From: Macrostomum lignano
Taxonomy: Eukaryota
Direction: 5' to 3'
DNA length: 64,000 bases
NCBI GenBank assembly: GCA_002269645.1
Contig: NIVC01001634.1
Span: 1 to 64,000, forward strand
Of this stretch, positions 7,701 through 64,000 are shown piece by piece (position 1 is the stretch's first letter; every line of letters starts with the position of its first letter). The notes below the pieces were generated by a model, which did not search any database, had not been told where the DNA came from, and saw only the letters and a list, made by a program, of their open reading frames with translations. Position numbers and translations under genes: made by a program.

Positions 7701-9964
7701 GGAAGCGTCTTGACACGGTCAAGTTCAGTGACATCTTTGCTTTCAGGCAAGGGTTCGACGTTGCGTTCCGGCCGAGGACTATACCGGTCAATGCTACGAT
7801 CAAGGGGCTGTACCAGCATCATTATCTGCGATATCATCAAGATCCTTCTGGGACAGTAGCTCGTATCACGTCCACAGCCTGCTTCATCCAGCCAGCACCG
7901 TGCTCTTATTTGTACAACCGCCTTGAAAGCCAGCAATCTGGTGTACGATACCAGCATCCCTATGTGAACTTTGGCATCAAACTTTCTCTTTGCCATGGCT
8001 TAACCTTAACTTTCCATTTGATGCTTGCCTGGCCTACCAGCAACTCCCAGTTTAGGAGCTTGACAATTCAGCAACCACCTCATGAGCCACAGCATTTCAG
8101 CGATACCCCATTAGTCTTAACGACTCAGCAACTCCCCCCCCCTCCGACGAGCTTTGGCATATCAGCAATTCCTTCCAAGAGCCACAGCATTTCAGCAATT
8201 ACTGCATGAGTCTTAACATCTTAGCCACTAATCCAGTCCAGTCTTATGGTTGAATCCTAACCCTAACTTTAACCCTGCTAAGAGCCACAGCATTAACCGA
8301 GCCCCATGCTTCGCTAGGGTAAGAAAGGAGGTCCGCATCCTCAAGCACAACTTGGACTTCTTCACATATCAAACGCGACCTCTGGTTGTCCTTCTAGCGC
8401 AAACTGGTTCCTCACCTCCCTTCATTAACCAGCAGGATTTTTTTCCAAAGCCTGCTAAAGCTAACTCAAATTAAAAATAGACAATTTACTATAGCTATCA
8501 ACTCCCTGAAACCAATAAACCCCCTTGGACTCCCTGGACTTCCCTGGACTCCCTAGGACTCCCCTGGACTCCCAGTTCCAGCAACCCCCACACAGAGACA
8601 GAGACGCATGCTTTATTGCCGTCAATTAGGAAAATTAAATATTGTGACCCAGTCAATAATTTTCAATTTTCAAGAGGACAGAAGGTGACACACAGGTAAG
8701 CCAACCTAGGTCTCCGCTGTCAAGTTGCCTATCATCAGCTCTAAAACTATCCAGTAGCAATTAAAATCTGCACTTCACGCAGCCACATGAAGCATTTCTC
8801 CCAACAGCAACAGCATAGGAATCCTACTCACGTCCGCTCAGACTGGGAGCGCCTGTCAGAAGCACCGCGTTGCCGTTGAGAACTATTGAAGTGACTGCCT
8901 CGGATATCTGAAATTTTATAATGAGCTTCGTTGTTAGTATTTATGTCTCCTTTATTTGCACCCATCCCCTGTCATCTCTCCTTCTCCCAACTTTTCATAC
9001 TCAGAAAGCTTCAAAACGTCACTCACTGCAATTGTTGCAATCATTTTTCCAGCCAGAATGTTTGACGCTAAGTTGGGCTCAAAGAACAGCTGATAGTTTA
9101 ACGGTTTCACATGGGCTGGCAGTCTGCGAGCGATGCAGTCACAAAGTATTCTTATGGTTTGTTATAATTAGCTGGTGGGAAATTGGTGCTTTTCGAACTT
9201 TGAAGTGATGATAAGAGTGACAATGAGAGTGGAAATTAGGAGTGACGATAAGAGTGACAAAGTGAGTGACAACAGAGTGACAATACGAATTATATCAGGA
9301 GTGACGATAAGAGTGACAATGCGAGTGAGATCAGGAGTGACAATAAAAGTGACAATGCGAGTGAGATCAGGAGTGATAAGAGATGCGAGTGAGATCAGGA
9401 GTGCCAGTTACAGTAGAAAGCTTCACAATAAATTACTCGATCAGGAGTGACAATGCGAGTGAGATCAGGAGTGACGATAAGAGTGACAATGCGAGTGAGA
9501 TTAGGAGTGAAGATAAGACTAACAATGCGAGTGAGATCAGGAGTGATAAGAGATACGAGTGAGATCAGGAGTGACATAAGAGTGACAATGCGAGTGAGAT
9601 CAGGATTGACGATAAGACTAACAATGCGAGTGAGATCAGGAGTGACAATAAAAGTGACAATGCGAGTGAGATCAGGAGTGATAAGAGATGCGAGTGAGAT
9701 CAGGAGTGCCAGTTACAGTAGAAAGCTTCACAATGAATTACTCTCAGACATTTTCAGCTGTGCAGAGCGAGTACTTGCCTGTACTTTCGCGTCGAACTTG
9801 CTGCAGATGTCACCTGAAATCGATCAATACAGTCAGGTGAATTCCCCGTTCAGAAGCGGACAGCTGATTATGATGCCTACCTGAATGCTGAAAGCAGCTG
9901 ACAGCAAAGCCAAGGCAGCAGCAAAAGTGACCAGACAGGAAGCCGGAACACTGCAGGTGGACAT
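4792..9964 (-). CDS. M1-family zinc aminopeptidase (aminopeptidase N / puromycin-sensitive-like) with N-terminal signal peptide/anchor, ~921 aa
   Basis: Exons 9964-9881, 9813-9779, 9150-9027, 8907-8832 and 7238-4792 join in phase (2766 nt). They give the signal peptide, the RRLPAHVKPLNYQLFFEPNL M1 N-terminal motif, THFEPTDARKAFLCWDEPAMKATF, VAMENWG, the HELAH-x18-E zinc site and SYGKG (catalytic Tyr). Confidence 0.9.
7487..8209 (+). other. Unassigned 240-codon ORF antisense within aminopeptidase intron 4; possibly a decayed retroelement fragment
   Basis: Non-repetitive open frame with no recognisable domain; only a weak resemblance to the LINE endonuclease-RT linker region. Confidence 0.2.
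9200..9735. repeat. 24/36-bp minisatellite (GAGTGACAATGCGAGTGAGATCAG-type) filling aminopeptidase intron 2
   Basis: Tandem units, with a larger block duplicated (ending ..GTGCCAGTTACAGTAGAAAGCTTCACAAT at ~9430 and ~9733). Confidence 0.9.
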
Positions 9965-11309: not shown

Positions 11310-20777
<9,468 letters not shown>

Positions 20778-22848: not shown

Positions 22849-24523
<1,675 letters not shown>

Positions 24524-24757
24524 GGCAGGAGGCTCGCGCTACTGGAAGAAAAGTTTCGATAGCAGGGAGATAGGAGAGAGACAGGCTATCTGAGCCGTCA
24601 CAAGTCAAGGAGGATCGCATTGGTCCGCAGATCCCCAGCATCCCATTGGCCGGCACAGCCAACAAAAGGGATGAGGAGAGGTCGCGGAGAGGCGGCTCGG
24701 ACCAGTTTCGGAGAAAAAAGTTTATTCTGCTTAAAAACGAAATTCAATTTTCAAGGG

Positions 24758-26199
24758 ATGGCGCCTAGCAACTCTTCAGCAGCCCATCCACCTCTGATGG
24801 CTCCCGGCTCCCAGGACGCCATCAGTGTGCAGGTGTTGCTGGACCTGCTGACTCTCAACGAGACACCGGACGCATCCGTCATCGAGGCGATCTTCTACAA
24901 GCACCAGGCGGGCCACAAGCTGTCCAGCCCCTTCTACATCGGCCTGTGCGTTGCCTTCGGCGCCCTGCTGGTCACCGCCCTCATCGGCAACCTGCTCGTT
25001 CTCTACTCAATCATCTCCTGCTGGACTCAGCGGAAAACGCATCGTTGCCTCTACCTGAACCTCATCACCTGCGACCTGCTAGTAGCCACCGTCATCATCC
25101 CGGCTACCTGCTTCGACCAGCTGGACAGTCGATGGCTGTTCGGCGGCTCCGTGACCTGCGGCATCCGCCAAGGCCTGAGCGTCTGCCTGATGTTCAGCAG
25201 TGTGCATACGGCCACTGTGCTCAGCTGGCTGAGAAGTCTAGCGGCCAAACGGGCATATCGACCGCCGAAGGGTCGCACTGAGGGCCTCCTGGTGGCCGCC
25301 ATCTGGTTGGTGGCCGTGGCCCTGTCCTGTCCAGCTGCTGTAGTGTCCGAGGCCCACCAGCTGCTGCACGTTGTCAACGAGGTGATGAAGAACCAGCTGG
25401 ACAGGCCCGTGAACTGGCCAGTGTGCATCGAGAACTGGGACCGGCTGGGCCAGAAGCCCAAGTTCTGGTACGGCTTCGCCATCCTGCACCTGGCCTGCGT
25501 GCTGCCTCTGCTCAGCCTGGGTGTCGCCTACTTCAGGATCTGCCGCGCCATCTACCGGAGCAACCGGGTGCTGAATGCGCACAAGAGGTGCCAGGGAGTG
25601 CTGTCCGTCACCTACCACCATCACCAGAACACGCCGGACAATACTGTGCTGAGCATGAGGCCCAACTTCTCGCTGGCGTCCACCTGCAGCGCAATCAACC
25701 GCAGGAAGAGGGCCACCAACTCAAGGAGGATGTTCCTGCTCGGCCTGGGACTGGTGCTGATCTTTGCCGTCACCTGGCTGCCGCTGCAGGTGAGGGCTGA
25801 CCGACCGACTGACTGACTGACTGACTGACTGACTGACTGACTGACTGACTGACTGACTGACTGACTGACTGACTGACTGACTGACTGACTGACTGACTGA
25901 CTGACTGACTGACTGACTGACTGACTGACTGACTGACTGACTGACTGACTGACTGACTGACTGACTGACTGACTGACTGACTGACTGACTGACTGACTGA
26001 CTGACTGACTGACTGACTGACTGACTGACTGACTGACTGACTGACTGACTGACTGACTGACTGACTGACTGACTGACTGACTTGAGTGAGTGGGTAACTG
26101 ACTGACTGACTGACTGACTGACTGACTGACTGACTGACTGACTTGAGTGAGTGGGTAACTGACTGACTGACTGACTGACAGACACACAGACGGACAGAA

Positions 26200-27534: not shown

Positions 27535-30500
27535 ACTGTCTGTGTGTTTAGCGGGACCTGAGTTATGTTAATGCGTTACGTGGACCACGCAATTCCGGTT
27601 AAAAAAAGAGTCTGTTTTGACAACGCGAAAGGCTAGCTAGGGTTATCTTTTTGTTAACTTGACGGAATAGCCAGTTCGGGGAAACTGTGGTGGTTCACTA
27701 ACTACGTTTTGGGGACCGGGTTAGGTGGACCGCAAAAAAACAGTTGGTTTAGTTAGACCTCTTTCGTTGTAGAAAATTTATTGCTTTAAACTGTTCTTTT
27801 GAACTAATTAAAACAGAAATTCTCAAAAAGAACAGATAAAAGGGTTACGACGTCATTTAATGAAAATATCCCAAGTTCAAACCAATTTATTTAGCATTAC
27901 TAATCGGGTTAATCGGGTTAAACAAATGTACGATCGCATTAGTTAGTTGCGTCGCGTGAATACAAGAAGGTGAATGAAAATAAAGCATTTTGAAAATAAA
28001 TACAGAATCATATCAAATACTAACTGTAAACTCATTAAAACTAATTTAGGTCAAAATGTATGCTTCAAATACATGTTAACAAACGTAAGATTCCATTAGT
28101 TAAAAAGGTCATCCGAGTACGAGCCTACAAGAAGTTGAAGGGCATTTTTAATAACGACAAAAGTTACTAAAACTGAAATTAAATTGATTTGACTACATCA
28201 GTCCTATTATACTGAATGAGTTGGTGAGCAATCATATGATAAGCCAATCATTTTACCGACTTTCATCTTTTCGTTCACGCAGATGATGGCTTAATCTTCT
28301 TATTTTTTCTACGAAATATTCTCCTGGACCTTCCCTGCCTCCGTGGTCCGGGACCGCTTCTGTTATTGATCTGTCATTGCCTCTCTCACGAATTTCAGCT
28401 TACTCAGCCATCGAATCCACTTTCGTCAGCTCAGCTTCTTTTACAGTTCGTTTTAACCTTCATCTCGGTGAAACGCAGTCAGTCTCGTCGAGCTCAGGCG
28501 AACAAAATCAACCACAGGCTCCTACAAAGGTAGAAAATAAAATTAACTGACAATCAAACAGACACAGAAATCTGTTCCAGTTGTGTCTGTAGGTTATGTG
28601 GACCACCTCAGATCCAGAGCCTCAAACAGACAGAGAAATCTGTTCGAGTTGTGTCTGTGGGGGAGGTGAACCACCTTCTGAGAGCCTAAGCCTCAAACAG
28701 ACTTAGAGAGCTGCTTCAGTTGTGTCTATAGGTTATGTGGACCACCTAAGAGCCAGAGCCTCAAACAGACAGAGAAATCTGTTCGAGTTGTGTCTGTAGG
28801 TTAGGTGGACCAGCTACTGAGAGCCAAAGCCTCAAACAGACTGAGAGAGCTGCTTCAGTTGTGTCTGTAGGTTATGTGGACCACCTAAGAGCCAGAGCCT
28901 CAAACAGACAGAGAAATCTGTTCGAGTTGTGTCTGTAGGTTAGGTGGACCAGCTACTCCAAAGCACTTCTAGGCGATAGTCTGAGCCAGGAATCTCCGAG
29001 AGCCTCTCGTTACACATCCAGATGTTCTACCTTGATGCTGGACTAGCTCACTTTCTAGGAATCTGTTCTGATTGCATTCTAACAAACTGAAGCATTCTCG
29101 GCACTAAACTTTCTCGGCGGCTCTGAGAGCCAGAGCCTCAAACAGACAGAGAAATCTGTTCGAGTTGTGTCTGTAGGTTAGGTGGACCAGCTACTCCACA
29201 GCACTTCTAGGCGATAATCTGAGCCAGGAATCTCCGAGAGCCTCTCGTTACACATCCAGATGTTCTGCCTTGATGCTGGACTAGCTCACTTTCTAGCAAT
29301 ATGTTCTGATTGCATTCTAACAAACTGAAGCATTCTCGGCACTAAACTTTCTCGGCGGCTCTGAGATCCAGAGCCTCAAACAGACAGAGAAATCTGTTCG
29401 AGTTGTGTCTGTAGGTTAGGTGGACCAGCTACTCCAAAGCACTTCTAGGCGATAATCTGAGCCAGGAATCTCCGAGAGCCTCTCGTTACACATCCAGATG
29501 TTCTACCTTGATGCTGGACTAGCTCACTTTCTAGGAATCTGTTCTGATTGCATTCTAACAAACTGAAGCATTCTCGGCACTAAACTTTCTCGGCGGCTCT
29601 GAGAGCCAGAGCCTAAACAGACAGAGAAATCTGTTCGAGTTGTGTCTGTAGGTTAGGTGGACCACCTTCTGAGAGCCAAAGCCTCAAACAGACTGAGAGA
29701 GCTGCTTCAGTTGTGTCTGTAGGTTATGAGGACCACCTAAGAGCCAGAGCCTCAAACAGACAGAGAAATCTGTTCGAGTTGTGTCTGTAGGTTAGGTGGA
29801 CCAGCTACTCCACAGCACTTCTAGGCGATAATCTGAGCCAGGAGTCTCCGAGAGACTTTCGTTACACATCCAGATGTTCTGCCTTGATGCTGGACTAGCT
29901 CACTTTCTAGGAATCTGTTCTGATTGCATTCTAACAAACTGAAGCATTCTCGGCACTAAACTTTCTCGGCGGCTCTGAGAGCCAGAGCCTCAAACAGACA
30001 GAGAAATCTGTTCGAGTTGTGTCTGTAGGTTAGGTGGACCAGCTACTCCACAGCACTTCTAGGCGATAATCTGAGCCAGGAGTCTCCGAGAGACTTTCGT
30101 TACACATCCAGATGTTCTGCCTTGATGCTGGACTAGCTCACTTTCTAGGAATCTGTTCTGATTGCATTCTAACAAACTGAAGCATTTTATGCACTAAACT
30201 TTCTCGGCGGCTCTAAGAGCCAGAGCCTAAACAGACAGAGAAATCTGTTCGAGTTGTGTCTGTAGGTTAGGTGGACCACCTTCTGAGAGCCAAAGCCTCA
30301 AACAGACTGAGAGAGCTGCTTCAGTTGTGTCTGTAGGTTATGAGGACCACCTAAGAGCCAGAGCCTCAAACAGACAGAGAAATCTGTTCGAGTTGTGTCT
30401 GTAGGTTAGGTGGACCAGCTACTCCACAGCACTTCTAGGCGATAATCTGAGCCAGGAGTCTCCGAGAGACTTTCGTTACACATCCAGATGTTCTGCCTTG

Positions 30501-33500
30501 ATGCTGGACTAGCTCACTTTCTAGGAATCTGTTCTGATTGCATTCTAACAAACTGAAGCATTCTCGGCACTAAACTTTCTCGGCGGCTCTGAGAGCCAGA
30601 GCCTCAAACAGACAGAGAAATCTGTTCGAGTTGTGTCTGTAGGTTAGGTGGACCAGCTATTCTACAGCACTTCTAGGCGATATTCTGAGCCAGGAATCTC
30701 CGAGAGCCTCTCGTTACAAATCCAGATGTTCTGCCTTGATGCTGGACTAGCTCACTTTCTAGGAATCTGTTCTGATTGCATTCTAACAAACTGAAGCATT
30801 CTCGGCACTAAACTTTCTCGGCGGCTCTGAGAGCCAGAGCCTCAAACAGACAGAGAAATCTGTTCGAGTTGTGTCTGTAGGTTAGGTGGACCAGCTATTC
30901 TACAGCACTTCTAGGCGATAATCTGAGCCAGGAGTCTCCGAGAGACTTTCGTTACACATCCAGATGTTCTGCCTTGATGCTGGACTAGCTCACTTTCTAG
31001 GAATCTGTTCTGATTGCATTCTAACAAACTGAAGCATTTTATGCACTAAACTTTCTCGGCGGCTCTAAGAGCCAGAGCCTAAACAGACAGAGAAATCTGT
31101 TCGAGTTGTGTCTGTAGGTTAGGTGGACCACCTTCTGAGAGCCAAAGCCTCAAACAGACTGAGAGAGCTGCTTCAGTTGTGTCTGTAGGTTATGAGGACC
31201 ACCTAAGAGCCAGAGCCTCAAACAGACAGAGAAATCTGTTCGAGTTGTGTCTGTAGGTTAGGTGGACCAGCTACTCCACAGCACTTCTAGGCGATAATCT
31301 GAGCCAGGAATCTCCGAGAGCCTCTCGTTACACATCCAGATGTTCTACCTTGATGCTGGACTAGCTCACTTTCTAGGAATCTGTTCTGATTGCATTCTAA
31401 CAAACTGAAGCATTCTCGGCACTAAACTTTCTCGGCGGCTCTGAGAGCCAGAGCCTCAAACAGACAGAGAAATCTGTTCGAGTTGTGTCTGTAGGTTAGG
31501 TGGACCAGCTATTCTACAGCACTTCTAGGCGATATTCTGAGCCAGGAATCTCCGAGAGCCTCTCGTTACAAATCCAGATGTTCTGCCTTGATGCTGGACT
31601 AGCTCACTTTCTAGGAATCTGTTCTGATTGCATTCTAACAAACTGAAGCATTCTCGGCACTAAACTTTCTCGGCGGCTCTGAGAGCCAGAGCCTCAAACA
31701 GACAGAGAAATCTGTTCGAGTTGTGTCTGTAGGTTAGGTGGACCAGCTATTCTACAGCACTTCTAGGCGATAATCTGAGCCAGGAGTCTCCGAGAGACTT
31801 TCGTTACACATCCAGATGTTCTGCCTTGATGCTGGACTAGCTCACTTTCTAGGAATCTGTTCTGATTGCATTCTAACAAACTGAAGCATTCTCGGCACTA
31901 AACTTTCTCGGCGGCTCTGAGAGCCAGAGCCTAAACAGACAGAGAAATCTGTTCGAGTTGTGTCTGTAGGTTAGGTGGACCAGATACTCCACAGCACTTC
32001 TAGGCGATAATCTTAGCCAGGAGTCTCCGAGAGACTTTCGTTACACATCCAGATGTTCTGCCTTGATGCTGGACTAGCTCACTTTCTAGGAATCTGTTCT
32101 GATTGCATTCTAACAAACTGAAGCATTTTATGCACTAAACTTTCTCGGCGGCTCTAAGAGCCAGAGCCTAAACAGACAGAGAAATCTGTTCGAGTTGTGT
32201 CTGTAGGTTAGGTGGACCACCTTCTGAGAGCCAAAGCCTCAAACAGACTGAGAGAGCTGCTTCAGTTGTGTCTGTAGGTTATGAGGACCACCTAAGAGCC
32301 AGAGCCTCAAACAGACAGAGAAATCTGTTCGAGTTGTGTCTGTAGGTTAGGTGGACCAGCTACTCCACAGCACTTCTAGGCGATAATCTGAGCCAGGAAT
32401 CTCCGAGAGCCTCTCGTTACACATCCAGATGTTCTGCCTTGATGCTGGACTAGCTCACTTTCTAGGAATCTGTTCTGATTGCATTCTAACAAACTGAAGC
32501 ATTCTCGGCACTAAACTTTCTCGGCGGCTCTGAGAGCCAGAGCCTCAAACAGACAGAGAAATCTGTTCGAGTTGTGTCTGTAGGTTAGGTGGACCAGCTA
32601 CTGAGAGCCAAAGCCTTAAACAGACTGAGAGAGCTGCTTCAGTTGTGTCTGTAGGTTATGTGGACCACCTAAGAGCCAGAGCCTCAAACAGACAGAGAAA
32701 TCTGTTCGAGTTGTGTCTGTAGGTTAGGTGGACCAGCTACTCCACAGCACTTCTAGGCGATAATCTGAGCCAGGAATCTCCGAGAGCCTCTCGTTACACA
32801 TCCAGATGTTCTGCCTTGATGCTGGACTAGCTCACTTTCTAGGAATCTGTTCTGATTGCATTCTAACAAACTGAAGCATTCTCGGCACTAAACTTTCTCG
32901 GCGGCTCTGAGAGCCAGAGCCTCAAACAGACAGAGAAATCTGTTCGAGTTGTGTCTGTAGGTTAGGTGGACCAGCTACTGAGAGCCAAAGCCTTAAACAG
33001 ACTGAGAGAGCTGCTTCAGTTGTGTCTGTAGGTTATGTGGACCACCTAAGAGCCAGAGCCCTAAACAGACAGAGAAATCTGTTCGAGTTGTGTCTGTAGG
33101 TTAGTTGGACCAGCTACTCCACAGCACTTCTAGGCGATAATCTGAGCCAGGAATCTCCGAGAGCCTCTCGTTACACATCCAGATGTTCTACCTCGATGCT
33201 GGACTAGCTCACTTTCTAGGAATATGTTCTGATTGCATTCTAACAAACTGAAGCATTCTCGGCACTAAACATTCTCGGCGGCTCTGAGATCCAGAGCCTC
33301 AAACAGACAGAAATCTGTTCGAGTTGTGTCTGTAGGTTAGGTGGACCAGCTACTCCACAGCACTTCTAGGCGATAATCTGAGCCAGGAGTCTCCGAGAGA
33401 CTTTCGTTACACATCCAGATGTTCTGCCTTGATGCTGGACTAGCTCACTTTCTAGGAATATGTTCTGATTGCATTCTAACAAACTGAAGCATTCTCGGCA

Positions 33501-35793
33501 CTAAACTTTCTCGGCGGCTCTGAGAGCCAGAGCCTCAAACAGACAGAGAAATCTGTTCGAGTTGTGTCTGTAGGTTAGGTGGACCAGCTACTGAGAGCCA
33601 AAGCCTCAAACAGACTGAGAGAGCTGCTTCAGTTGTGTCTGTAGGTTATGTGGACCACCTAAGAGCCAGAGCCCTAAACAGACAGAGAAATCTGTTCGAG
33701 TTGTGTCTGTAGGTTAGGTGGACCAGCTACTCCACAGCACTTCTAGGCGATAATCTGAGCCAGGAATCTCCGAGAGCCTCTCGTTACACATCCAGATGTT
33801 CTACCTCGATGCTGGACTAGCTCACTTTCTAGGAATATGTTCTGATTGCATTCTAACAAACTGAAGCATTCTCGGCACTAAACTTTCTCGGCGGCTCTGA
33901 GAGCCAGAGCCTCAAACAGACAGAGAAATCTGTTCGAGTTGTGTCTGTAGGTTAGGTGGACCACCTTCTGAGAGCCAAAGCCTCAAACAGACTGAGAGAG
34001 CTGATTCAGTTGTGTCTGTAGGTTAGGTGGACCAGCTTCTCTACAGCAATTGAGTTGCAGGCCTTGCAGCTAGCTACTTTGAGATCATCAAACGAAACTC
34101 ACTTTTCTGGACTCGGTGTCGACGGATTTGCGAGCAGACTGATGATTTTCACCAGGCGATGCGGCTTCTTCGATTTCGCAGTGGCTTTTTGCGACGGTGT
34201 TTTTTTTAGTTTTTATTTTAGGCTTGGCGTCCTTTTTTGCGGGTCATCATATCTTGGTTGTAGATTACAGTTTTTGGCACAATAAATTTATATATGGATG
34301 AAACTTGGAGTAAGGATTAACATTAGACCTATTAAGTATAAAAAAACCGTTCTAATCTATACAATTGCAATCCTTTAGAGTTGTATAGTATGGATTATAA
34401 GTACTTTCTTTTAAACTGTCTGTGTCTGGTCTCACTACGCCATGGTTTACGTGGACCACCCGCTTAGACATTATATATCCCTCTCTCCACTGTCTTACCT
34501 TCAGAACGCTTGCGGGTTTCCTATTGGCTGCGGTCGGTCCCATTGTTGGGGTGGATCTATCCTCCTAAGTGTTAACCAGCCAATTATAGAAAGGGAGGTC
34601 TGTCTGTCTGTCTGTTCCAACCCTATACTCCTGCACATGTGTTTACGAGGACCAAACAGACAGTGAGTGTTAGGCTGACTGTTAATGCGTTCTTAGTTTT
34701 ACTGGGACCGCAATCAAGTCGACCTTTTGCTAGAGAGTCAGAGACCCGATCGCTAGCTAAAAGGCCCTTCTTAATTGCGTCCTCTTGATCAAATCTTTTG
34801 CATGTACATGTATGAATTGTCCTTTTCAATTAGGTAAATTGCATCTTCAACTTTGCACTTGAAAGGCTGCAGCTTAGGATCTTCTTCTTCCAACATTGGA
34901 GGAGGATAGAACAGGATATCCCATAGTGTTTAGGATAGAATTGGCAAGCACTTAATTCATGAAGTTGCTATTTTCTTCTTGTGTAATGGTAGAGCCTCAG
35001 AAATTCGCATTTACACAGTGTGGCTATCAAGGACCACTGGGAGTTCTTGAGAAGTCATTGAAGAATACTATTTAAGCTTCACTTAAATATCTTTCTTGTC
35101 TCGGAGTCTTTATCGTTTGATCTGGTTAGCGAATTGGATTTCTTTACGTTGGTGTCTTACTCTGTGAGTCTGTGCTCAGAGTACGATACCGGAATTGCTG
35201 GAACTGAGCTAATTAAATGGAGTTTAAAGTTTACTGTATCAAATTCATTTCGCATACGAGGTTTCAGAATTTTTAATTAACCTGCGCACCTACTTGAATG
35301 TCAAAGAACTGAACGCATATTGTTTTAAAGCCAGTAGCGGTCATAATATGATGCCAACATAGCCCTTTGTTCGTAAGGTAATGATCTGTAAAAAAATTCA
35401 GTTTTGCATCGAATCTATGCTTAATAACTGCTATACACAAACAGACACAAACAGACACAAACAGACACAAACAGACACAAACAGACGATTTTCGAAAAAT
35501 TTTCTAAAATTTTTCGGTTAACGTGGACCAGACTCGCTCGGTTTAGGTAGACCAGGCTGGAGGTCCAGCTAAACTGAAATGCAAATAACTTTGGAAAAAT
35601 CCATGCTAGACATCCCAAAATTGCTTAAGCCTTTCTTGACCCGCCTGACATTAATGTGAGATCCTCATCAACGTCTTAACCCCACCAGAGACAAAATTAT
35701 TTGGTGGTCCACCTAAGTGGTCTACCTACACCGGTTGGTCCAGCTAACGAGGCTACTGAACTTCCAAAAAGTCCACGTAAACACACAGACAGT
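27535..35793. mobile_element. Putative non-autonomous TIR DNA transposon (~8.3 kb) carrying an internal satellite array
   Basis: Perfect 16-bp inverted repeat ACTGTCTGTGTGTTTA at 27535-27550 / 35778-35793. Recurrent TTA[CGT]GTGGACCA motif is forward from 27575 to 35530 and reversed near the right end (35700-35780). No intact transposase and no clear TSD. Confidence 0.5.
28560..34045. repeat. Complex higher-order satellite (two related ~65-70-bp modules plus a ~170-bp module; ~240-bp and ~135-bp units)
   Basis: Recurring GAGCC[A/G]GAGCCTCAAACAGAC..GTTGTGTCTGTAGGTTAGGTGGACCA modules and CCACAGCACTTCTAGGCG..CGGCGGCTCTGA module, in irregular order. Confidence 0.97.
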
Positions 35794-42003: not shown

Positions 42004-54715
<12,712 letters not shown>

Positions 54716-56038: not shown

Positions 56039-56803
56039 TTAGCTGCAGAATCCCCATAACTGAGTCTGCAATTTAATCACAAAGGCAACTGAATGGCAAA
56101 CCCAGTTATGAGTTGAATTGCATTCAAAACAAATTGAACCAACTACTGTGTTTATTTATTATCGAACACAAAGCGAAATCTAAAAGCAAAATGTGTTTGA
56201 CTGCTTGTGCCATTATTAAACATTATTGATGCGAAATCTAGATGCGTTAGATTTAAATGCAAGCTGTAACATTAACATTTCAAAACAGTGTAATTCGTTT
56301 GCTATAAACTACTGTACGATTGTACTTGCGTACTTATTCTTCATCGAGAAAATTTACAATTTAATAAGCTGTTCATAGCGAGAGTCTAATATTCAAGCAA
56401 GTGGATAGTGCGAAAGGGTGAGGGAGAGAGGAGGAGAGAGAGGGTTGAGAGTGAGGGAGGGGATCAGTAGGAGGGTGAGAAGGAGGGTGAGAAAGAGTGG
56501 ATGAGATCGCCAGTGAATGGTATCAGTGTGTGGATACAAGGCTTATAAATTGAGAAGAATTTTTAACGTAGAAAATTAGTTATCGAGTTTAATATCCAAC
56601 GCTTAAAAAATACGAGCAAATCTGCATTCAATACGAAATTTGCAATAATGAGATATTTCACTGCATTGATTTCACTGCATAGCTTGCAAACTTGCTTTCA
56701 AATGAAAAAATTAATATAAACTGTTATCAAGGGTAGCGAACTATCTACAAAAAAGCAGAAACTTTCATTTCTATGTACACACGCTGGATGCATTGACCTG
56801 CTG

Positions 56804-59800
56804 TTATTGAGATTTGCTCTCATTGTCAAGAGGCAAAATTGCTGATAACAATGCCTGTTCTGACTCCACCGCATCTTGACTTCTTTTCTCCTGCTCACTG
56901 CCGCTGAAATTATTGAATTAAGGCATGCAATCTCTGTAATTAGTGGCTTTCATTGGTGCTGATGCACTGAGCAATGTGACACTGTCCTGTCTAACAGGTG
57001 TGTGACACTGTCCTGTCTAACAGGTGTATGACACTGTCCTGTCTAACAGGTGTGTGACACTGTCTAACAGGTGTGTGACACTGTCTAACAGGTGTGTGAC
57101 ACTGTCCTGTCTAACAGGTGTGTGACACTGTCCTGTCTAACAGGTGTGTGACACTGTCCTGTCTAACAGGTGTGTGACACTGTCCTGTCTAACAGGTGTG
57201 TGACACTGTCTAACAGGTGTGTGACACTGTCCTGTCTAACAGGTGTGTGACACTGTCCTGTCTAACAGGTGTGTGACACTGTCCTGTCTAACAGGTGTGT
57301 GACACTGTCCTGTCTAACAGGTGTGTGACACTGTCCTGTCTAACAGGTGTGTGTCACTGTCTAACAGGTGTGTGACACTGTCTAACAGGTGTGTGACACT
57401 GTCTAACAGGTGTGTGACACTGTCTAACAGGTGTGTGACACTGTCTAACAGGTGTGTGACACTGTCTAACAGGTGTGTGACACTGTCTAACAGGTGTGTG
57501 ACACTGTCTAACAGGTGTGTGACACTGTCCTGTCTAACAGGTGTGTGACATTGTCTAACAGGTGTGTAACACTGTCCTGTCTAACAGGTGTGTGTCACTG
57601 TCCTGTCTAACAGGTGTGTGACACTGTCCTGTCTAACAGATGTGTGACACTGTCCTGTCTAACAGGTGTGTGACACTGTCCTGTCTAACAGGTGTGTGAC
57701 ACTGTCCTGTCTAACAGGTGTGTGACACTGTCCTGTCTAACAGGTGTGTGACACTGTCCTGTCTAACAGGTGTGTGACACTGTCCTGTCTAACAGGTGCG
57801 TGTCACTGTCCTGTCTAACATCCGTGTGACACTGTCCTGTCTAACAGGTGTGTGACACTGTCCTGTCTAACAGGTGTGTGACATTGTCTAACAGGTGTGT
57901 GACATTGTCTAACAGGTGTGTGACATTGTCTAACAGGTGTGTGACATTGTCTAACAGGTGTGTGACATTGTCTAACAGGTGTGTGACACTGTCCTGTCTA
58001 ACAGGTGTGTGACACTGTCCTGTCTAACAGGTGTGTGACACTGTCTAACAGGTGTGTGACACTGTCCTGTCTAACAGGTGTGTGACACTGTCCTGTCTAA
58101 CAGGTGTGTGACACTGTCCTGTCTAACAGGTGTGTGACACTGTCCTGTCTAACAGGTGTGTGACACTGTCCTGTCTAACAGGTGTGTGTCACTGTCTAAC
58201 AGGTGTGTGACACTGTCTAACAGGTGTGTGACACTGTCTAACAGGTGTGTGACACTGTCTAACAGGTGTGTGACACTGTCTAACAGGTGTGTGACACTGT
58301 CCTGTCTAACAGGTGTGTGACATTGTCTAACAGGTGTGTGACACTGTCCTGTCTAACAGGTGTGTGACACTGTCCTGTCTAACAGGTGTGTGACACTGTC
58401 CTGTCTAACAGGTGTGTGACACTGTCCTGTCTAACAGGTGTGTGTCACTGTCTAACAGGTGTGTGACACTGTCCTGTCTAACAGGTGTGTGACACTGTCC
58501 TGTCTAACAGGTGTGTGACACTGTCCTGTCTAACAGGTGTGTGACACTGTCCTGTCTAACAGGTGCGTGTCACTGTCCTGTCTAACATCCGTGTGACACT
58601 GTCCTGTCTAACAGGTGTGTGACACTGTCCTGTCTAACAGGTGTGTGACATTGTCTAACAGGTGTGTGACATTGTCTAACAGGTGTGTGACATTGTCTAA
58701 CAGGTGTGTGACATTGTCTAACAGGTGTGTGACATTGTCTAACAGGTGTGTGACATTGTCTAACAGGTGTGTGACACTGTCCTGTCTAACAGGTGTGTGA
58801 CACTGTCCTGTCTAACAGGTGTGTGACACTGTCCTGTCTAACAGGTGTGTGACACTGTCCTGTCTAACAGGTGCGTGTCACTGTCCTGTCTAACATCCGT
58901 GTGACACTGTCCTGTCTAACAGGTGTGTGACACTGTCTAACAGGTGTGTGACACTGTCCTGTCTAACAGGTGTGTGACACTGTCTAACATGTGTGTGACA
59001 CTGTCTAACAGGTGTGTGACACTGTCCTGTCTAACAGGTGTGTGACACTGTCCTGTCTAACAGGTGTGTGACATTGTCTAACAGATGTGTGACACTGTCC
59101 TGTCTAACAGGTGTGTGACACTGTCTAACAGGTGTGTGACACTGTCTAACAGGTGTGTGATACTGTCTAACAGGTGTGTGACACTGTCCTGTCTAACAGG
59201 TGTGTGACACTGTCTAACAGGTGTGTGACACTGTCTAACAGGTGTGTGACACTGTCCTGTCTAACAGGTGTGTGACACTGTCCTGTCTAACAGGTGTGTG
59301 ACACTGTCTAACAGGTGTGTGACACTGTCTAACAGGTGTGTGACATTGTCTAACAGGTGTGTGACATTGTCTAACAGGTGTGTGACATTGTCTAACAGGT
59401 GTGTGACACTGTCTAACAGGTGTGTGACACTGTCTAACAGGTGTGTGACACTGTCCTGTCTAACAGGTGTGTGACACTGTCCTGTCTAACAGGTGTGTGA
59501 CATTGTCTAACAGATGTGTGACACTGTCCTGTCTAACAGGTGTGTGACACTGTCTAACAGGTGTGTGACACTGTCTAACAGGTGTGTGACACTGTCTAAC
59601 AGGTGTGTGACACTGTCTAACAGGTGTGTGACATTGTCTAACAGATGTGTGACACTGTCCTGTCTAACAGGTGTGTGACACTGTCTAACAGGTGTGTGAC
59701 ACTGTCTAACAGGTGTGTGACACTGTCTAACAGGTGTGTGACATTGTCTAACAGGTGTGTGACATTGTCTAACAGGTGTGTGACATTGTCTAACAGGTGT

Positions 59801-62800
59801 GTGACATTGTCTAACAGGTGTGTGACACCGTCTAACAGGTGTGTGACATTGTCTAACAGGTGTGTGACACCGTCTAACAGGTGTGTGACATTGTCTAACA
59901 GGTGTGTGACATTGTCTAACAGCTGTGTGACACTGTCTAACAGTGTGTAACACTGTCTAACAGGTGCAATATTCTACAATCTGGCAAAAGGAATTCTGAG
60001 TCATCAAGCTGTAACATTGCCACAACTCACTGTTCAATCGCCGGAACGGCCTCATTTTGCTCAGGCTTTTCCTTCTCATCAGGATCCTCTTCTTCCTCCC
60101 GTTGTTGCTGAGGCTGCTTTGCAGCAGCTGCAGCCTCATCCTGGCCCGTGAGTCGCTCCTCCCTCTGCCGCTTGTGCATTCGAACTATTCGATGTTGGCG
60201 CCTGTTCGATTTTAGCGGCGACTCGCGAAACAGAATCAGTGCGTCCGAGCGGCCGACGCCACGGAGACAGCGAGCCAGGTGCGCAATGCTGGCGGAGGGT
60301 CGTCTTGACCAGGTGTGCAGCATCTCCCGGATGGCGAGCTGGTTACCACCGCGAAGGGCCTGGCGCTCCAGGATTGACAGCTCGTCAGGTGTGAGGCCTG
60401 TGAGGATTTAACAGATGACCAGGTGATTCTCGAGTGTCTAACGGGTGATTCTCGAGTGTCTAACGGGTGATTCTCGAGTGTCTAACAGGTGATTCTCGAG
60501 TGTCTAACGGGTGATTCTCGAGTGTCTAACGGGTGATTCTCGAGTGTCTAACGGGTGATTCTCGAGTGTCTAACGGGTTATACGATTCTACGGTTAATGG
60601 AATGCTATATTAAAGGCAATAAATATTTCTCACATTACTTACAGTCTCGCAGTTGTCATTTTTAGTTGTCAGTTTTATTTCAGAGAAATGTTTTGCAGGA
60701 AAAATATTGCCGATAAATTTTGCCTAACGATGCATGCATTTCAGTCTTGGTTCGATGAGCAAATGGCTAATTGTTTTCCCCATTGTTTTGTTTAATTAAA
60801 AAATATTTTCCAGACAAAATTAACCATTGTGTTCTCAGTTTCTACAACGCCCACTCGCCTGTTTGAGTTTTGACTAAACTACTCGTAAATAGGAAAATAA
60901 AATTTATTTTGTCTTAAAATATACTCGTATGTACTGCCTATTCTACTCTACAAATAGGTAAGTAGTATGCTTTGCGTTTTGCTGCTAAACCTATCTGCGG
61001 GTTTAATCGTTCTAACTTTTAAATAATATCATGTAGAATAAGCACCGAATCTGTTGTTATTTATGGTCCCAAACCTGATATTGTTTACCGGTATGGCGCC
61101 AAACCTGATATTGTTTACCGGTATGGTCCCAAACCTGATATTGTTTACCGGTATGGCGCCAAACCTGATATTGTTTACCGGTATGGTCCCAAACCTGATA
61201 TTGTTTACCGGTATGGTCCCAAACCTGATATTGTTTACCGGTATGGTCCCAAACCTGATATTGTTTACCGGTATGGTCCCAAACCTGATATTGTTTACCG
61301 GTATGGTCCCAAACCTGATATTGTTTACCGGTATGGTCCCAAACCTGATATTGTTTACCGGTATGGTCCCAAACCTGATATTGTTTACCGGTATGGTCCC
61401 AAACCTGATATTGTTTACCGGTATGGCGCCAAACCTGATATTGTTTACCGGTATGGTCCCAAACCTGATATTGTTTACCGGTATGGCGCCAAACCTGATA
61501 TTGTTTACCGGTATGGTCCCAAACCTGATATTGTTTACTGGTATGGTCCCAAACCTGATATTGTTTACCGGTATGGTCCCAAACCTGATATTGTTTACCG
61601 GTATGGTCCCAAACCTGATATTGTTTACCGGTATGGCGCCAAACCTGATATTGTTTACCGGTATGGTCCCAAACCTGATATTGTTTACCGGTATGGCGCC
61701 AAACCTGATATTGTTTACCGGTATGGTCCCAAACCTGATATTGTTTACCGGTATGGTCCCAAACCTGATATTGTTTACCGGTATGGTCCCAAACCTGATA
61801 TTGTTTACTGGTATGGTCCCAAACCTGATATTGTTTACCGGTATGGTCCCAAACCTGATATTGTTTACCGGTATGGTCCCAAACCTGATATTGTTTACCG
61901 GTATGGTCCCAAACCTGATATTGTTTACCGGTATGGTCCCAAACCTGATATTGTTTACCGGTATGGTCCCAAACCTGATATTGTTTACTGGTATGGTCCC
62001 AAACCTGATATTGTTTACTGGTATGGCGCCAAACCTGATATTGTTTACCGGTATGGCGCCAAACCTGATATTGTTTACTGGTATGGTCCCAAACCTGATA
62101 TTGTTTACCGGTATGGTCCCAAACCTGATATTGTTTACCGGTATGGTCCCAAACCTGATATTGTTTACTGGTATGGTCCCAAACCTGATATTGTTTACTG
62201 GTATGGCGCCAAACCTGATATTGTTTACCGGTATGGTCCCAAACCTGATATTGTTTACTGGTATGGCGCCAAACCTGATATTGTTTACCGGTATGGTCCC
62301 AAACCTGATATTGTTTACCGGTATGGTCCCAAACCTGATATTGTTTACTGGTATGGTCCCAAACCTGATATTGTTTACCGGTATGGTCCCAAACCTGATA
62401 TTGTTTACCGGTATGGTCCCAAACCTGATATTGTTTATGGCGCCAAACCTATTATTGTTTATGGCGTCACAACTTCCACAACTCACCCAGCTCACTCGCC
62501 AGCCGTCGCCACCTATCGGGATCAGCATCGTTAGCCAGAATATTCTCCAATCGTTGCATCCGCGATCCTGACAGTTCCCTCAACAGTCGCCGTCCGTCAA
62601 CTAGAATATTGTCCTCGGTTGGCTCGCTGCCGCCGAATCCGCTATCGGCGCTGCGACGCTTCGGTCGACGACATCCGGAGGAGTTGGCTGCTGTTAGGGG
62701 GAACTGGAACAGCACCAACTGCTCCTGATGCTCTGGCTCCTGATGCTCATGCTCAGGCTGATGCTGCTGTCGCAATGCTGACTCCACCGCAACCGCCTTC

Positions 62801-63000
62801 TCCTCGGTTGTCGACATGCCCGCTCTTCTCAGCATCTGTTTGACAAGGATCCAGGCCACTAAACCGAGGATCAGGCAGCCGAGCAGGCCGCAGTACACGG
62901 GCAGCAGGTCGGTGCCTTCGAGCAGGCTGCCAGCGCTGCTTGACGAGGCCGAAGATGACCAGCTTGGGGACAGCGGATCCGCACCTGCAGATGGAGACAT
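56804..63000 (-). CDS. p75NTR (NGFR/TNFRSF16)/NRADD-like single-pass membrane protein with intracellular death domain; 5' end uncertain
   Basis: Exons (63000 or acceptor 62984)-62487, 60397-60031 and 56903-56804 are phase-consistent. TM LLPVYCGLLGCLILGLVAWILVK resembles p75 LIPVYCSILAAVVVGLVAYIAFK. Juxtamembrane SADSG; death domain RWRRLASELGLTPDELSILE..IREMLHTWSRRPSASIAHLARCLRGVGRSDAL. Confidence 0.85.
56975..59965. repeat. 21/26-bp minisatellite (TGTCTAACAGGTGTGTGACAC[TGTCC])n filling the last intron of the death-domain gene
   Basis: 3-kb tandem array. Confidence 0.98.
60412..60580. repeat. 22-bp minisatellite (GTGTCTAACGGGTGATTCTCGA)n
   Basis: About 7 units. Confidence 0.93.
61068..62465. 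repeat. 30-bp minisatellite (AAACCTGATATTGTTTACCGGTATGGTCCC)n
   Basis: About 46 units in the death-domain gene intron; explains ORFs 61029-62528 and 61054-62571. Confidence 0.98.
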
Positions 63001-63768
63001 TTTGAGCTTAATAGTGAGAGCTGGAGTTGCGTGGATGATGGGAGTAGAGTGCTCCGATGTAACATGGTTGTACATGTGACTAATGAAGCGAAATAATATT
63101 TTAATTAATTAATTAGCTGAACATATGGGGATGTAGCTTAGTAGCTTAAGGAACAATTTGTGTCCTTGAGCCAGACAATTTAACTCTGAATTGCTTCAGT
63201 TGACCTAGATGTTAAATTGGTGTAATGCAGCATAGGGCAGGTGTAATCAATAATTGTTATTATTTCCATCTCCTTTACTTGTAAAATGCTGTTTAAGAAG
63301 TCCAAGCGTAAGAGAACCTTTAGAATTTTACGAGTATTTTTTTACGACACCTAATATAAATTATGTTATACAATACACACCATTTCAGCACACGCTGTAT
63401 CGGTTTTAGGCGCATAAAATCGATTTTTTCATACTTGTCCCAATATTATAGAACCAAAGCATTTTTAACGATTAATCAATTAAAGGCATCACCTCGCCAC
63501 TTTTAATTCTCGATCCAGTCGATATATATAGCTGTGGACCAATTAGTGGTGAATATATATGTACATTTGTCGACCATAAAAATTTTCTCTAAGTATCCCC
63601 TACTATAATGGAGATTTATGACTCTTCAAAACGGTTTGCATTATATTATACAACGGCCGTTTAATATTGGACAGGCGAACAATAAGATAAGAGCAATGAA
63701 ATCCGCAGATAAGCTATAACGGCAATTATCCGGCCAAAATTATTCTATTAATTATATATCGCTTTGAC

Positions 63769-63865
63769 CATGAGTTCGGCAACTCCCTCCACTCCACGGC
63801 CCGCAAAGCCTCTGCATCCGGCCCTCGGGTCCTTTTAAACTTTACAATGGAAATCCGGCCCGCTT
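63769..63865 (+). mobile_element. Degenerate hAT/Charlie-like MITE left end, homologous to 3852-3940
   Basis: Shares CGGCCCGC(G/A)AAGCC..ATCCGG(T/C)CC..GGG.CCTTT..AAA..CGGCCCGC; both copies are followed by CT-rich sequence. Confidence 0.45.
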
Positions 63866-63889
63866 TAGGTTTTGTCTTTTCTCAGCTCC

Positions 63890-64000
63890 CTTCTCTCTGA
63901 TCTCCGCTCCTCTCTTCTCTCCTCTCTCTTCTCTCCTCTCTCTTCTCTCCTCTCTCTTCTCTCCTCTCTCTTCTCTCCTCTCTCTTCTCTCCTCTCCTCG
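63890..64000. repeat. CT-rich 14-bp repeat (CTCTCTTCTCTCCT)n
   Basis: Direct observation. Confidence 0.9.

What the first reader, a model, noticed from the sequence alone, without database searches (positions are those of the whole stretch)
56804..63075. p75 neurotrophin receptor / NRADD-like death-domain protein, possibly without an ectodomain
Seen: the TM segment PVYCGLLGCLILGLVAWILVK aligns residue-for-residue with p75NTR PVYCSILAAVVVGLVAYIAFK, including the dimerising TM Cys. The juxtamembrane DSG motif and a p75-type death domain are present. No cysteine-rich TNFR repeats lie in the window; the in-frame ATG at 63000 would give a short Ser-rich ectodomain like mammalian NRADD/NRH2. A strong phase-1 acceptor at 62984 means CRD exons could lie beyond 64000. 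Established: p75 homologues are reported from only some protostomes. Inference: a neurotrophin-receptor-like signalling component in a probable flatworm, or an independently evolved NRADD-like form.
Basis: partly seen in the sequence, partly recalled or inferred. Interest (0 to 1): 0.7.

Follow-up and report, generated by a model that had tools for sequence, protein, structure and literature searches.

The report
Headless p75-like death-domain receptor, flatworm
This is a gene of the flatworm Macrostomum lignano for a membrane protein that keeps the transmembrane helix and death domain of the p75 neurotrophin receptor family but has no ligand-binding cysteine-rich repeats, a truncated form that arose in flatworms independently of the similar mammalian protein NRADD.

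Summary
On the minus strand, three exons (62984-62487, 60397-60031, 56903-56804) encode a Ser-rich stalk, a p75NTR-type transmembrane helix with the conserved Cys, a DSG juxtamembrane motif and a p75NTR-type death domain. The window is Macrostomum lignano. An RNA-seq-derived GenBank model of a 98-99% identical locus (BOX15_Mlig025712g2, 364 aa) uses the acceptor at 62984. It joins it to one upstream exon, about 7 kb beyond the window end, that adds 43 residues without any cysteine.

No cysteine-rich repeats were found in the window, in 18 kb upstream of the transmembrane exon at that locus, or upstream of a second headless paralogue (Mlig015487).

The closest relative (37% identity, BLASTP E 5e-40) is the published four-repeat NGFR-like receptor of the same species (Mlig018038g1). 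Homology starts in its stalk (WKELIDNGN), and two introns share position and phase.

In a neighbour-joining tree the three Macrostomum genes form one clade (96.5% bootstrap), apart from vertebrate NGFR and NRADD. The gene is therefore a lineage-specific, NRADD-like truncated paralogue, not an NRADD orthologue.

It probably acts as a ligand-blind partner or modulator of the full-length receptor; that step is inference. Interest is moderate: a new member of a known family, not described in the papers I could search.

The parts
62487..62984 (-). Coding exon E1 (second coding exon of the gene). It encodes the Ser-rich stalk, the transmembrane helix, the juxtamembrane region and the N-terminal half of the death domain. 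It ends ...ASELG with a phase-1 GTGAGT donor.
   Evidence: Identical exon limits in models P0001-P0003. 99.6% identical to L001 18305-18802.
62985..62986 (-). AG of the phase-1 splice acceptor that receives the upstream, out-of-window first coding exon.
   Evidence: Same intron position and phase in both paralogues.
62998..63000 (-). In-frame ATG 16 nt upstream of the acceptor. It is a possible alternative start (MSPSAGADPL...) only if transcription begins inside the first intron. The database models do not use it.
   Evidence: The ATG is conserved in L001.
62926..62970 (-). Ser-rich extracellular stalk segment (SPSWSSSASSSSAGS).
62839..62907 (-). p75NTR-type transmembrane helix LLPVYCGLLGCLILGLVAWILV followed by Lys. 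The conserved Cys codon is at 62892-62890.
   Evidence: p75NTR and NRADD TM matches; P, Y, C and L are invariant in the family alignment. It is the only hydrophobic segment. Modelled as one long helix with pLDDT 83-98.
62623..62658 (-). Juxtamembrane RRSADSGFGGSE, the DSG motif shared with p75NTR-like receptors. The octamer DSGFGGSE is identical in the full-length M. lignano paralogue.
62487..62583 (-). Death domain, N-terminal part (LRELSGSRMQRLENILANDADPDRWRRLASELG).
60031..60397 (-). Coding exon E2. It encodes the C-terminal part of the death domain (to 60222, ...SDALILFRE) and a charged, low-complexity tail. The GTGAGT donor overlaps an in-frame TGA (60029-60027), so intron retention would end the protein at ...AIEQ.
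   Evidence: (P0003 ends AIEQ).
56804..56903 (-). Coding exon E3 (last 33 codons, ...LDNESKSQ, plus stop TAA 56806-56804). It is used by model P0001 only. There is no PDZ-ligand C-terminus.
61062..62437 (.). 30-bp minisatellite (46 copies) that fills most of intron 1. A second array of 22-bp units lies at 60422-60578.
56985..59966 (.). 21-26-bp minisatellite (about 128 copies) that fills intron 2. This intron is 3.1 kb here and about 0.7 kb in the near-identical locus L001.

Best explanation
This is an expressed Macrostomum lignano gene (the Mlig025712 group) for a 'headless' member of the p75NTR/NRADD family. It is a single-pass membrane protein with no signal peptide.

Shown:
- The ectodomain is about 69 residues and has no cysteines. 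It consists of a stalk remnant (WKELIDNGN), one NST sequon and a Ser-rich stretch.
- The p75NTR-type transmembrane helix keeps the conserved Cys.
- The juxtamembrane DSG motif is present.
- The death domain is of the p75NTR type.
- The gene arose by DNA-level duplication of the flatworm's own four-CRD NGFR-like receptor (Mlig018038), with loss of the first exon, the single CRD exon and the 5' part of the stalk exon. It is therefore convergent with mammalian NRADD, not orthologous to it.

Inferred:
- The protein inserts N-out, using the transmembrane helix as a signal anchor.
- It cannot bind TNF-like or neurotrophin-like ligands through repeats.
- It acts as a ligand-blind partner. It would form homodimers, or heterodimers with the full-length receptor, through the transmembrane Cys and the death domain, and so tune that receptor's signalling. 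This is how p45/NRADD acts on p75NTR.
For: Family assignment: searches give sequence and profile matches to NRADD (5.8e-31), p75NTR DD (4e-20) and p75NTR TM (5e-13). All other death-domain families score 1e-11 or weaker. The AlphaFold model has DD pLDDT 94-98. Its three best Foldseek matches are p75NTR DD structures, with target-normalised TM-score 0.72-0.82 and rmsd 2.1-2.3 A. An exhaustive HMMER search of 1.84 billion representatives returned four-CRD 'TNFRSF16' proteins of Lingula, Capitella and molluscs.

No CRDs: the models P0001-P0003 start MPPALSQQ..., 11 residues before the stalk motif. Neither tblastn nor a CRD profile finds repeats in the window. None were found in 10 kb upstream of the first coding exon in L001, or in 10 kb upstream of the second headless paralogue in L002. 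The control locus L003 scores 5e-41. In-frame stops lie 27 and 16 codons upstream of the two MPPA starts, with only weak acceptor candidates between. A POU-homeobox gene ends 2 kb upstream of Mlig015487g2. In the full-length gene the CRD exon sits only about 750 bp upstream of the stalk exon.

Expression: the GenBank BOX15 models were built from RNA-seq by StringTie, TACO and TBONE (PMC5730564).

Origin: the alignment to Mlig018038g1 runs from WKELIDNGN to the end of the DD (37% identity, E 5e-40). The two shared introns have the same position and phase 1. The Macrostomum clade has 96.5% bootstrap support, and NRADD groups with vertebrate NGFR, weakly at 25%.

Topology: there is one hydrophobic segment and no N-terminal hydrophobic stretch. 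K+R counts are 0 before and 4 after the helix.

Against: I did not see RNA reads, 5' ends or trans-splice sites myself. The 5' end rests on published models and on the absence of CRD-like sequence in a limited span.

The open frame extends 27 codons upstream of the ATG in exon 0, so a further upstream exon is not formally excluded.

The only other copy I could compare is 98-99% identical in introns as well as exons. Purifying selection on this gene could therefore not be measured. Retention of the family-invariant residues is the only sign of constraint.

The C-terminus (SKSQ, or AIEQ) lacks the Val-ending PDZ-type tail seen in the full-length paralogue (MCQV), in the other headless paralogue (LTTV) and in most relatives.

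The tree places this gene with the four-CRD receptor rather than with the other headless paralogue. Either the head was lost twice or the tree is distorted by rate differences.

Dimerisation and modulation are pure analogy.
Confidence: 0.62

Rival explanations
1. It is an ordinary full-length p75-like receptor, and its CRD exons lie further upstream than the sequence examined. The MPPA start would then be an artefact of an incomplete transcript model.
For: The reading frame stays open for 27 codons upstream of the ATG in exon 0, and AG dinucleotides occur there. The intron before the transmembrane exon is already 8.2 kb, so long introns occur in this gene. I did not inspect reads.
Against: No CRD signal was found in 10 kb upstream of exon 0 in L001. 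That span contains only a duplicated copy of exon 0. Three models from two annotations start at the same Met. A second, divergent paralogue also starts MPPA just before the same stalk motif, and it has a POU gene ending 2 kb upstream. In the full-length gene the CRD exon is about 750 bp from the stalk exon. Similarity to the full-length protein stops about where the Met lies.
Confidence: 0.1
2. It is a decaying or functionless by-product of the heavily duplicated M. lignano genome. On this view it is a 5'-truncated duplicate that is transcribed but does nothing.
For: The genome has large recent duplications: 180 Mb in blocks at least 95% identical (PMC5730564). The locus is packed with unstable minisatellites. 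The PDZ-type C-terminus is lost. An acidic, His-rich insertion interrupts the juxtamembrane region. No selection test was possible.
Against: The frame is intact across three or four exons in all copies seen. At only 37% identity to its parent, it still keeps every invariant column of the family (P, Y, C and L in the helix; W, L, A, G and D in the DD) and the DSGFGGSE motif. The DD is predicted with pLDDT 94-98. Splice sites are canonical.
Confidence: 0.12
3. The death domain belongs to another death-domain family (MyD88/Pelle, ankyrin/UNC5, RIPK1/FADD), and the transmembrane match to p75NTR is chance among hydrophobic helices.
For: With the single sequence, the p75NTR DD match is only E 8.9e-5 and the TM matches only 2e-3 to 7e-3. 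MyD88 follows at 0.026. Foldseek E-values among DD structures are close to one another.
Against: The TM and DD hits point independently to the same family. The family profile separates NRADD and p75NTR from MyD88 by 9 to 20 orders of magnitude. The nearest full-length relatives are four-CRD TNFRSF16 proteins that align continuously from TM to DD. Pfam TNFR_16_TM and Death are recorded on the paralogues.
Confidence: 0.02

Closest known systems
Macrostomum lignano NGFR-like TNF receptor BOX15_Mlig018038g1 (513 aa; Bertevello et al. 2020, PMC7519573)
   Same: Same species. 37% identity from the stalk motif WKELIDNGN through the transmembrane helix, DSGFGGSE and the whole death domain. The stalk/TM intron and the intron inside the DD (at ELG) have the same position and phase. 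The two are sister genes in the tree (93.5%).
   Different: The published receptor has a first exon plus one exon with four CRDs. It ends in MCQV. The window gene lacks both of those exons and the 5' part of the stalk exon. It has a Ser-rich stalk insert and an acidic, His-rich juxtamembrane insert, and it ends SKSQ (or AIEQ). Bertevello et al. reported a single TNF receptor per flatworm and did not describe headless paralogues.
Mammalian NRADD / NRH2 / p45 (PDB 6hj7, 2ib1)
   Same: Same architecture: a short ectodomain without a ligand-binding domain, a p75-type transmembrane helix with the conserved Cys, and a p75-type death domain (PMC4122344). It is the best PDB match of the family profile (5.8e-31).
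   Different: It is not an orthologue. NRADD arose from a duplication early in vertebrate evolution, and a later deletion gave the mammalian form (PMC8686249). The window gene arose inside the Macrostomum lineage. NRADD has no counterpart of the WKELIDNGN stalk motif.
Vertebrate p75NTR (NGFR, TNFRSF16) and invertebrate p75NTR-like receptors (Capitella, Lottia, Lingula, molluscs; Wilson 2009, PMC2772990; 'PITA', bioRxiv 10.1101/2021.12.26.474206)
   Same: Transmembrane helix pattern (I/L)P(V/L/I)YC...GL...K, the DSG juxtamembrane motif and the death-domain fold, with the conserved W..LA.ELG and GR.D positions.
   Different: Those receptors carry four cysteine-rich repeats and usually a Val-ending C-terminus. 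This protein has neither.
Second headless M. lignano paralogue, BOX15_Mlig015487g1-g3 (281-283 aa)
   Same: It also starts MPPA, has the WK(V/E)LIDNG stalk motif followed by an N-x-T sequon, a p75-type transmembrane helix with Cys and a DD, and no CRDs. It shares both introns.
   Different: Only 30% identical to the window protein. It has lost the DSG motif and keeps a T-T-V C-terminus. It branches outside the pair formed by the window gene and the four-CRD receptor.

Membership tests
p75NTR/NRADD family (TNFRSF16-type transmembrane helix plus death domain) | Transmembrane helix of the TNFR_16_TM type with the conserved P-x-Y-C start, internal G-L and a closing Lys | tested here: met
   The window encodes LLPVYCGLLGCLILGLVAWILVK. 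It matches p75NTR TM peptides and the NRADD TM region. P, Y, C and L are invariant across 18 relatives. The profile hits 2mic at 5e-13.
p75NTR/NRADD family (TNFRSF16-type transmembrane helix plus death domain) | Death domain closest to the p75NTR/NRADD death domains rather than to other DD families | tested here: met
   Sequence: p75NTR DD is the best PDB hit. Profile: NRADD 5.8e-31 and p75NTR 4e-20 against MyD88 1e-11. Structure: the three best Foldseek matches are p75NTR DD.
p75NTR/NRADD family (TNFRSF16-type transmembrane helix plus death domain) | Juxtamembrane DSG motif between the helix and the death domain | tested here: met
   RRSADSGFGGSE at 62658-62623 aligns with the DSG column that is conserved in nearly all relatives.
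p75NTR proper / TNF receptor superfamily | One or more TNFR cysteine-rich repeats in the ectodomain (four in p75NTR) | tested here: not met
   The models have a 69-residue ectodomain without Cys. No CRD was found by tblastn or by profile HMM in the window, in L001 upstream or in L002 upstream. The control L003 scores 5e-41.
p75NTR proper / TNF receptor superfamily | N-terminal signal peptide (type I membrane protein) | tested here: not met
   The N-terminal stretch has no hydrophobic segment (11-residue windows starting in the first 25 residues; maximum Kyte-Doolittle mean 0.48). The only hydrophobic segment is the transmembrane helix.
p75NTR proper / TNF receptor superfamily | Binding of neurotrophins (or TNF-like ligands) | not testable with these tools
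   Ligand binding needs a binding assay. The absence of repeats makes p75-type binding implausible.
p75NTR proper / TNF receptor superfamily | C-terminal PDZ-type tail ending in Val (as in most relatives retrieved) | tested here: not met
   The protein ends ...NESKSQ (E3), or ...AIEQ if intron 2 is retained. The relatives mostly end in V.
NRADD/NRH2 orthology group (vertebrates) | Architecture: short ectodomain without a ligand-binding domain, p75-type TM with Cys, and a DD | tested here: met
   The NRADD description is taken from PMC4122344.
NRADD/NRH2 orthology group (vertebrates) | Descent from the vertebrate NGFR/NRADD duplication | tested here: not met
   Neighbour-joining tree on 157 columns with 200 bootstraps. 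The window gene groups with the M. lignano paralogues (96.5%). NRADD groups, weakly, with vertebrate NGFR. phmmer gives the M. lignano four-CRD receptor E 5e-33 and the best non-Macrostomum protein 3.8e-16.
NRADD/NRH2 orthology group (vertebrates) | Disulphide-linked heterodimer with the full-length receptor through the transmembrane Cys | not testable with these tools
   The Cys is present in this protein and in Mlig018038g1. Pairing needs biochemistry.

The most novel reading that the evidence does not exclude
Flatworms evolved their own 'headless p75' regulators, possibly twice. Mlig025712 is sister to the four-CRD receptor, and Mlig015487 lies outside that pair. If these proteins pair with the full-length NGFR-like receptor through the transmembrane Cys and the death domain, then truncating p75 into a ligand-blind modulator is a recurrent evolutionary solution, seen in mammals and in Macrostomum. 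It would also add an unrecognised layer to TNF/p75-type signalling in a regeneration model that has endogenous TNF ligands.
Probability: 0.35. Interest if true: 0.5.

Novelty: new member of a known kind. Interest (0 to 1): 0.35.

Why it matters
The published survey of flatworm TNF receptors concluded that each flatworm has a single NGFR-like receptor (PMC7519573). It searched for the cysteine-rich repeats, so by design it could not see headless relatives.

This locus, together with the Mlig015487 group, shows that M. lignano has at least three gene groups of the p75 family. Two of them lack the ligand-binding head.

That gives a clean case of convergence with mammalian NRADD. It also offers a tractable system for asking what a headless p75 does, because transgenesis is established in M. 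lignano (PMC5730564). The same species has TNF ligand homologues (PMC7519573), which makes a receptor-modulator relationship testable.

It does not bear on whether flatworms have neurotrophin signalling.

Tried and rejected
- The first word-indexed protein search with the full protein returned only three near-identical M. lignano models. Low-complexity words probably crowded out distant candidates.
- A second word-indexed search with the TM-DD alignment added only molluscan fragments. It found no flatworm or vertebrate sequences.
- A simple scan for Cys-rich open frames upstream in L001 gave only repeat-derived noise. I replaced it with tblastn and a CRD profile HMM.
- My first exon 2/3 junction (donor one base too far) gave a frame with stops. 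Moving the donor to the canonical GTGAGT restored the frame and matched model P0001.
- Comparing the window with L001 to look for exon-specific constraint failed. Introns are as similar as exons (98-99%), so the two are alleles or very recent duplicates.
- A first tree script timed out. It was rerun with a faster distance method.
- A literature search for the locus names found nothing.
- I looked for a TRAF6-type P-x-E motif in the PEHEHQEPEHQ stretch by eye and found none.
- I considered and rejected a retrocopy origin, because two introns are kept at the ancestral positions.
Full report
**What is in the sequence.** The gene lies on the minus strand. Reading the reverse complement of 56500-64000 and fixing the junctions by script gives three coding exons.

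- E1, 62984-62487. The acceptor is ...ctgcag|GTGCGG, an in-frame ATG lies 16 nt upstream at 63000, and the donor is G|GTGAGT in phase 1.
- E2, 60397-60031. The acceptor is ...cctcacag|GC and the donor is CA|GTGAGT.
- E3, 56903-56804. The acceptor is ...atttcag|C and the stop is TAA at 56806-56804.

The E2 donor overlaps an in-frame TGA, so an unspliced message would end ...AIEQ. Both introns are almost entirely minisatellite: 46 copies of a 30-mer at 61062-62437, and about 128 copies of a 21-26-mer at 56985-59966.

Read from the acceptor, the protein has these parts in order:

- a Ser-rich stretch;
- LLPVYCGLLGCLILGLVAWILVK (62907-62839);
- a basic stop-transfer sequence, KQMLRR;
- an acidic, His-rich insert;
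- RRSADSGFGGSE (62658-62623);
- a death domain split between E1 and E2 (62583-62487 and 60397-60222);
- a charged tail.

**Whose gene it is.** A protein search finds three Macrostomum lignano models at 84-98% identity. The best is GenBank BOX15_Mlig025712g2 (P0001, 364 aa, Pfam Death). All three models use the acceptor at 62984 and place one more exon in front: MPPALSQQPASWKELIDNGNLALTSGDQNDNENSTAVIHVSSQ.

That exon is not in the window. In the locus that encodes P0001 (L001, NIVC01000667.1) it lies 8.2 kb upstream of the transmembrane exon. The window is collinear with L001 and 98-99% identical to it in exons and introns alike. The missing exon should therefore lie about 7.3 kb beyond position 64000.

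The GenBank models of this assembly were derived from RNA-seq with StringTie, TACO and the TBONE boundary pipeline, with ORFs called by TransDecoder (PMC5730564). The exon chain therefore has transcript support, although I did not see the reads.

**Family.** The single sequence matches the following in a search of PDB sequences:

| PDB match | E-value |
|---|---|
| human p75NTR death domain | 8.9e-5 |
| NRADD, transmembrane region | 2e-3 |
| p75NTR transmembrane peptides | 7e-3 |

An exhaustive HMMER search of 1.84 billion representative proteins returns the M. lignano four-CRD receptor at 5e-33. After it come proteins that their sources call TNFRSF16 or TNFRSF16-like, from Lingula, Capitella (the p75NTR of Wilson 2009, PMC2772990), Ruditapes, Mya and others.

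These align continuously from the helix to the end of the death domain. Invariant residues are P, Y, C and L in the helix and W, L, A, G and D in the death domain.

A profile of that alignment scores as follows against PDB sequences:

| PDB match | E-value |
|---|---|
| NRADD, over TM to DD | 5.8e-31 |
| p75NTR DD | 4e-20 |
| p75NTR TM | 5e-13 |
| MyD88 | 1e-11 |
| ankyrin | 6e-10 |
| RIPK1 | 1e-9 |

An AlphaFold model of the TM-DD part has mean pLDDT 78.5. The helix is at 83-98 and the death domain at 94-98, with a disordered linker between them. Its three best Foldseek matches in the PDB are p75NTR death-domain structures, with target-normalised TM-score 0.72-0.82 and rmsd 2.1-2.3 A. Assignment to the p75NTR/NRADD family is secure.

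**No head.** The complete model has one hydrophobic segment and no N-terminal hydrophobic stretch. It has 0 K+R in the 15 residues before the helix and 4 after it. The ectodomain is about 69 residues, with no cysteine and one NST sequon.

The published M. lignano receptor (BOX15_Mlig018038g1, 513 aa, four CRDs, taken from the supplement of PMC7519573) served as the probe. By tblastn it finds only the stalk motif, the transmembrane exon and the DD exon in the window and in L001.

A profile HMM of 15 ectodomains was run against the six-frame translations. It finds nothing in the window (best E 2). It also finds nothing in L001, which holds 10 kb upstream of exon 0 (best E 0.08, on the wrong strand). 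The full-length locus L003, used as control, scores 5e-41.

In L003 all four repeats sit in one exon, only about 750 bp upstream of the stalk exon. In-frame stops lie 27 codons upstream of the ATG in L001, and the AG sites in between have weak pyrimidine tracts.

**A second headless paralogue.** The representative search also turned up BOX15_Mlig015487g1-g3 (281-283 aa; UniProt 'TNFR_16_TM domain-containing protein'). It too begins MPPA, then has DWKVLIDNG, an NFT sequon, a p75-type helix with Cys and a death domain, and ends LTTV.

At its locus L002, a POU-homeobox gene on the same strand ends 2 kb upstream of the start. An in-frame stop lies 16 codons upstream, and no CRD signal is present. 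This independent case makes an annotation artefact unlikely.

**Origin.** BLASTP of P0001 against the four-CRD receptor aligns residues 12-268 with 248-466 (37% identity, E 5e-40). The alignment starts exactly at WKELIDNGN. Identity to the other headless paralogue is 30%.

All three genes share the intron between the stalk and transmembrane exons and the intron inside the death domain at EL(M)G. Both are in phase 1. The copies were therefore made at the DNA level, not by retroposition.

I built a neighbour-joining tree on 157 columns with 200 bootstraps. The three Macrostomum genes form a clade at 96.5%. The window gene is sister to the four-CRD receptor at 93.5%. NRADD groups with vertebrate NGFR at only 25%.

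NRADD is reported to stem from a duplication early in vertebrate evolution, with a later deletion in mammals (PMC8686249). The flatworm form is therefore convergent with NRADD, not orthologous to it. The topology implies either two losses of the head or a rate artefact. The method and sampling are too light to decide between these.

**How it probably works.** The following are shown: the architecture, the retention of the helix Cys and of the family-invariant DD residues, the DSGFGGSE motif identical to that of the full-length paralogue, and the lack of any repeat.

The following are inferred. The protein would insert as a signal-anchor protein with the N-terminus outside, be glycosylated on the stalk, have no ligand binding of its own, and pair with itself or with the full-length receptor. 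The precedent is p45/NRADD. It has a truncated ectodomain without a neurotrophin-binding domain and heterodimerises with p75 through the transmembrane cysteines and the death domains, changing p75 output (PMC4122344).

M. lignano also has TNF ligand homologues (PMC7519573), so the full-length partner plausibly has an endogenous ligand. Nothing here connects the gene to neurotrophins.

**What weakens the case.**

- I did not see reads.
- The span searched upstream is finite.
- No selection test was possible.
- The C-terminus lacks the Val-ending tail of its relatives.
- The 3' end is ambiguous between E3 and read-through.

**Novelty.** NGFR-like receptors in flatworms, including this species, are published (PMC7519573). 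That survey reports one receptor per species and searched by the repeats. The PITA preprint cites it as well. No paper in the library names Mlig025712 or Mlig015487, and databases list them as hypothetical or 'death domain-containing' proteins. The finding is a new, independently truncated member of a known family, and I rate its interest as moderate.

Noticed in passing
L001 4886-5017 and 10001-10132: The first coding exon (MPPALSQQ...) and its 5.1-kb surroundings occur twice in tandem, with identical upstream sequence. This is either a real local duplication or an assembly artefact in NIVC01000667.1.
   Followed up: partly
window 60027-60036: The GTGAGT donor of intron 2 overlaps an in-frame TGA. 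Splicing or retention therefore gives two different C-termini (...NESKSQ or ...AIEQ). Database models exist for both (P0001 and P0003).
   Followed up: partly
window 56985-59966 versus L001 20617-21306: The intron 2 minisatellite is about 3 kb in the window, but the whole intron is about 0.7 kb in the 98-99% identical locus. Array length is unstable between copies.
   Followed up: no
P0002 and P0003 (database models of this gene): Two UniProt models skip part of the death domain (they jump from ...NDADPD to RPSASIAH or SIAHLAR). They look like mis-spliced predictions across the repeat-filled intron, and they carry no Pfam Death annotation.
   Followed up: no
L003 6001-18540 (full-length receptor Mlig018038g1): All four cysteine-rich repeats are encoded by one exon (8877-9434). 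The 17-residue first exon (MPRVRAALVKPADGQPQ) does not look like a signal peptide, so the published model may be incomplete at its 5' end.
   Followed up: no
L002 5915-7971: A POU-homeobox gene (Pfam Pou and Homeodomain) lies 2 kb upstream of, and on the same strand as, the second headless paralogue Mlig015487g2.
   Followed up: no
window 4792-7302 (-): An uninterrupted 836-codon ORF carries the HELAHQWFGNLV...WLNEGFA motif of M1 (gluzincin) aminopeptidases. It is apparently an intronless gene.
   Followed up: no
window 17780-18300 (+): An exon with [12 protein letters not shown], the pore-helix signature of ionotropic glutamate receptors. It runs straight into a (CTGT)n array of about 430 copies (18286-19997).
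   Followed up: no
window 24620-25816 (+): A 398-codon ORF with several hydrophobic helices. It looks like a rhodopsin-type G-protein-coupled receptor.
   Followed up: no
window 43787-44100 (-): A short open frame (...[16 protein letters not shown]...) resembles the C-terminal part of an ammonium transporter. It abuts a (GATA)n array.
   Followed up: no
window 28554-34034, 48060-50250, 22849-24523: The window is very rich in tandem repeats. There is a 238/377-bp satellite over 5.5 kb, a G+C-rich 18-mer repeated 119 times, and tetranucleotide arrays of 400 or more copies. This fits the 15% simple and tandem repeat content reported for this genome (PMC5730564).
   Followed up: no
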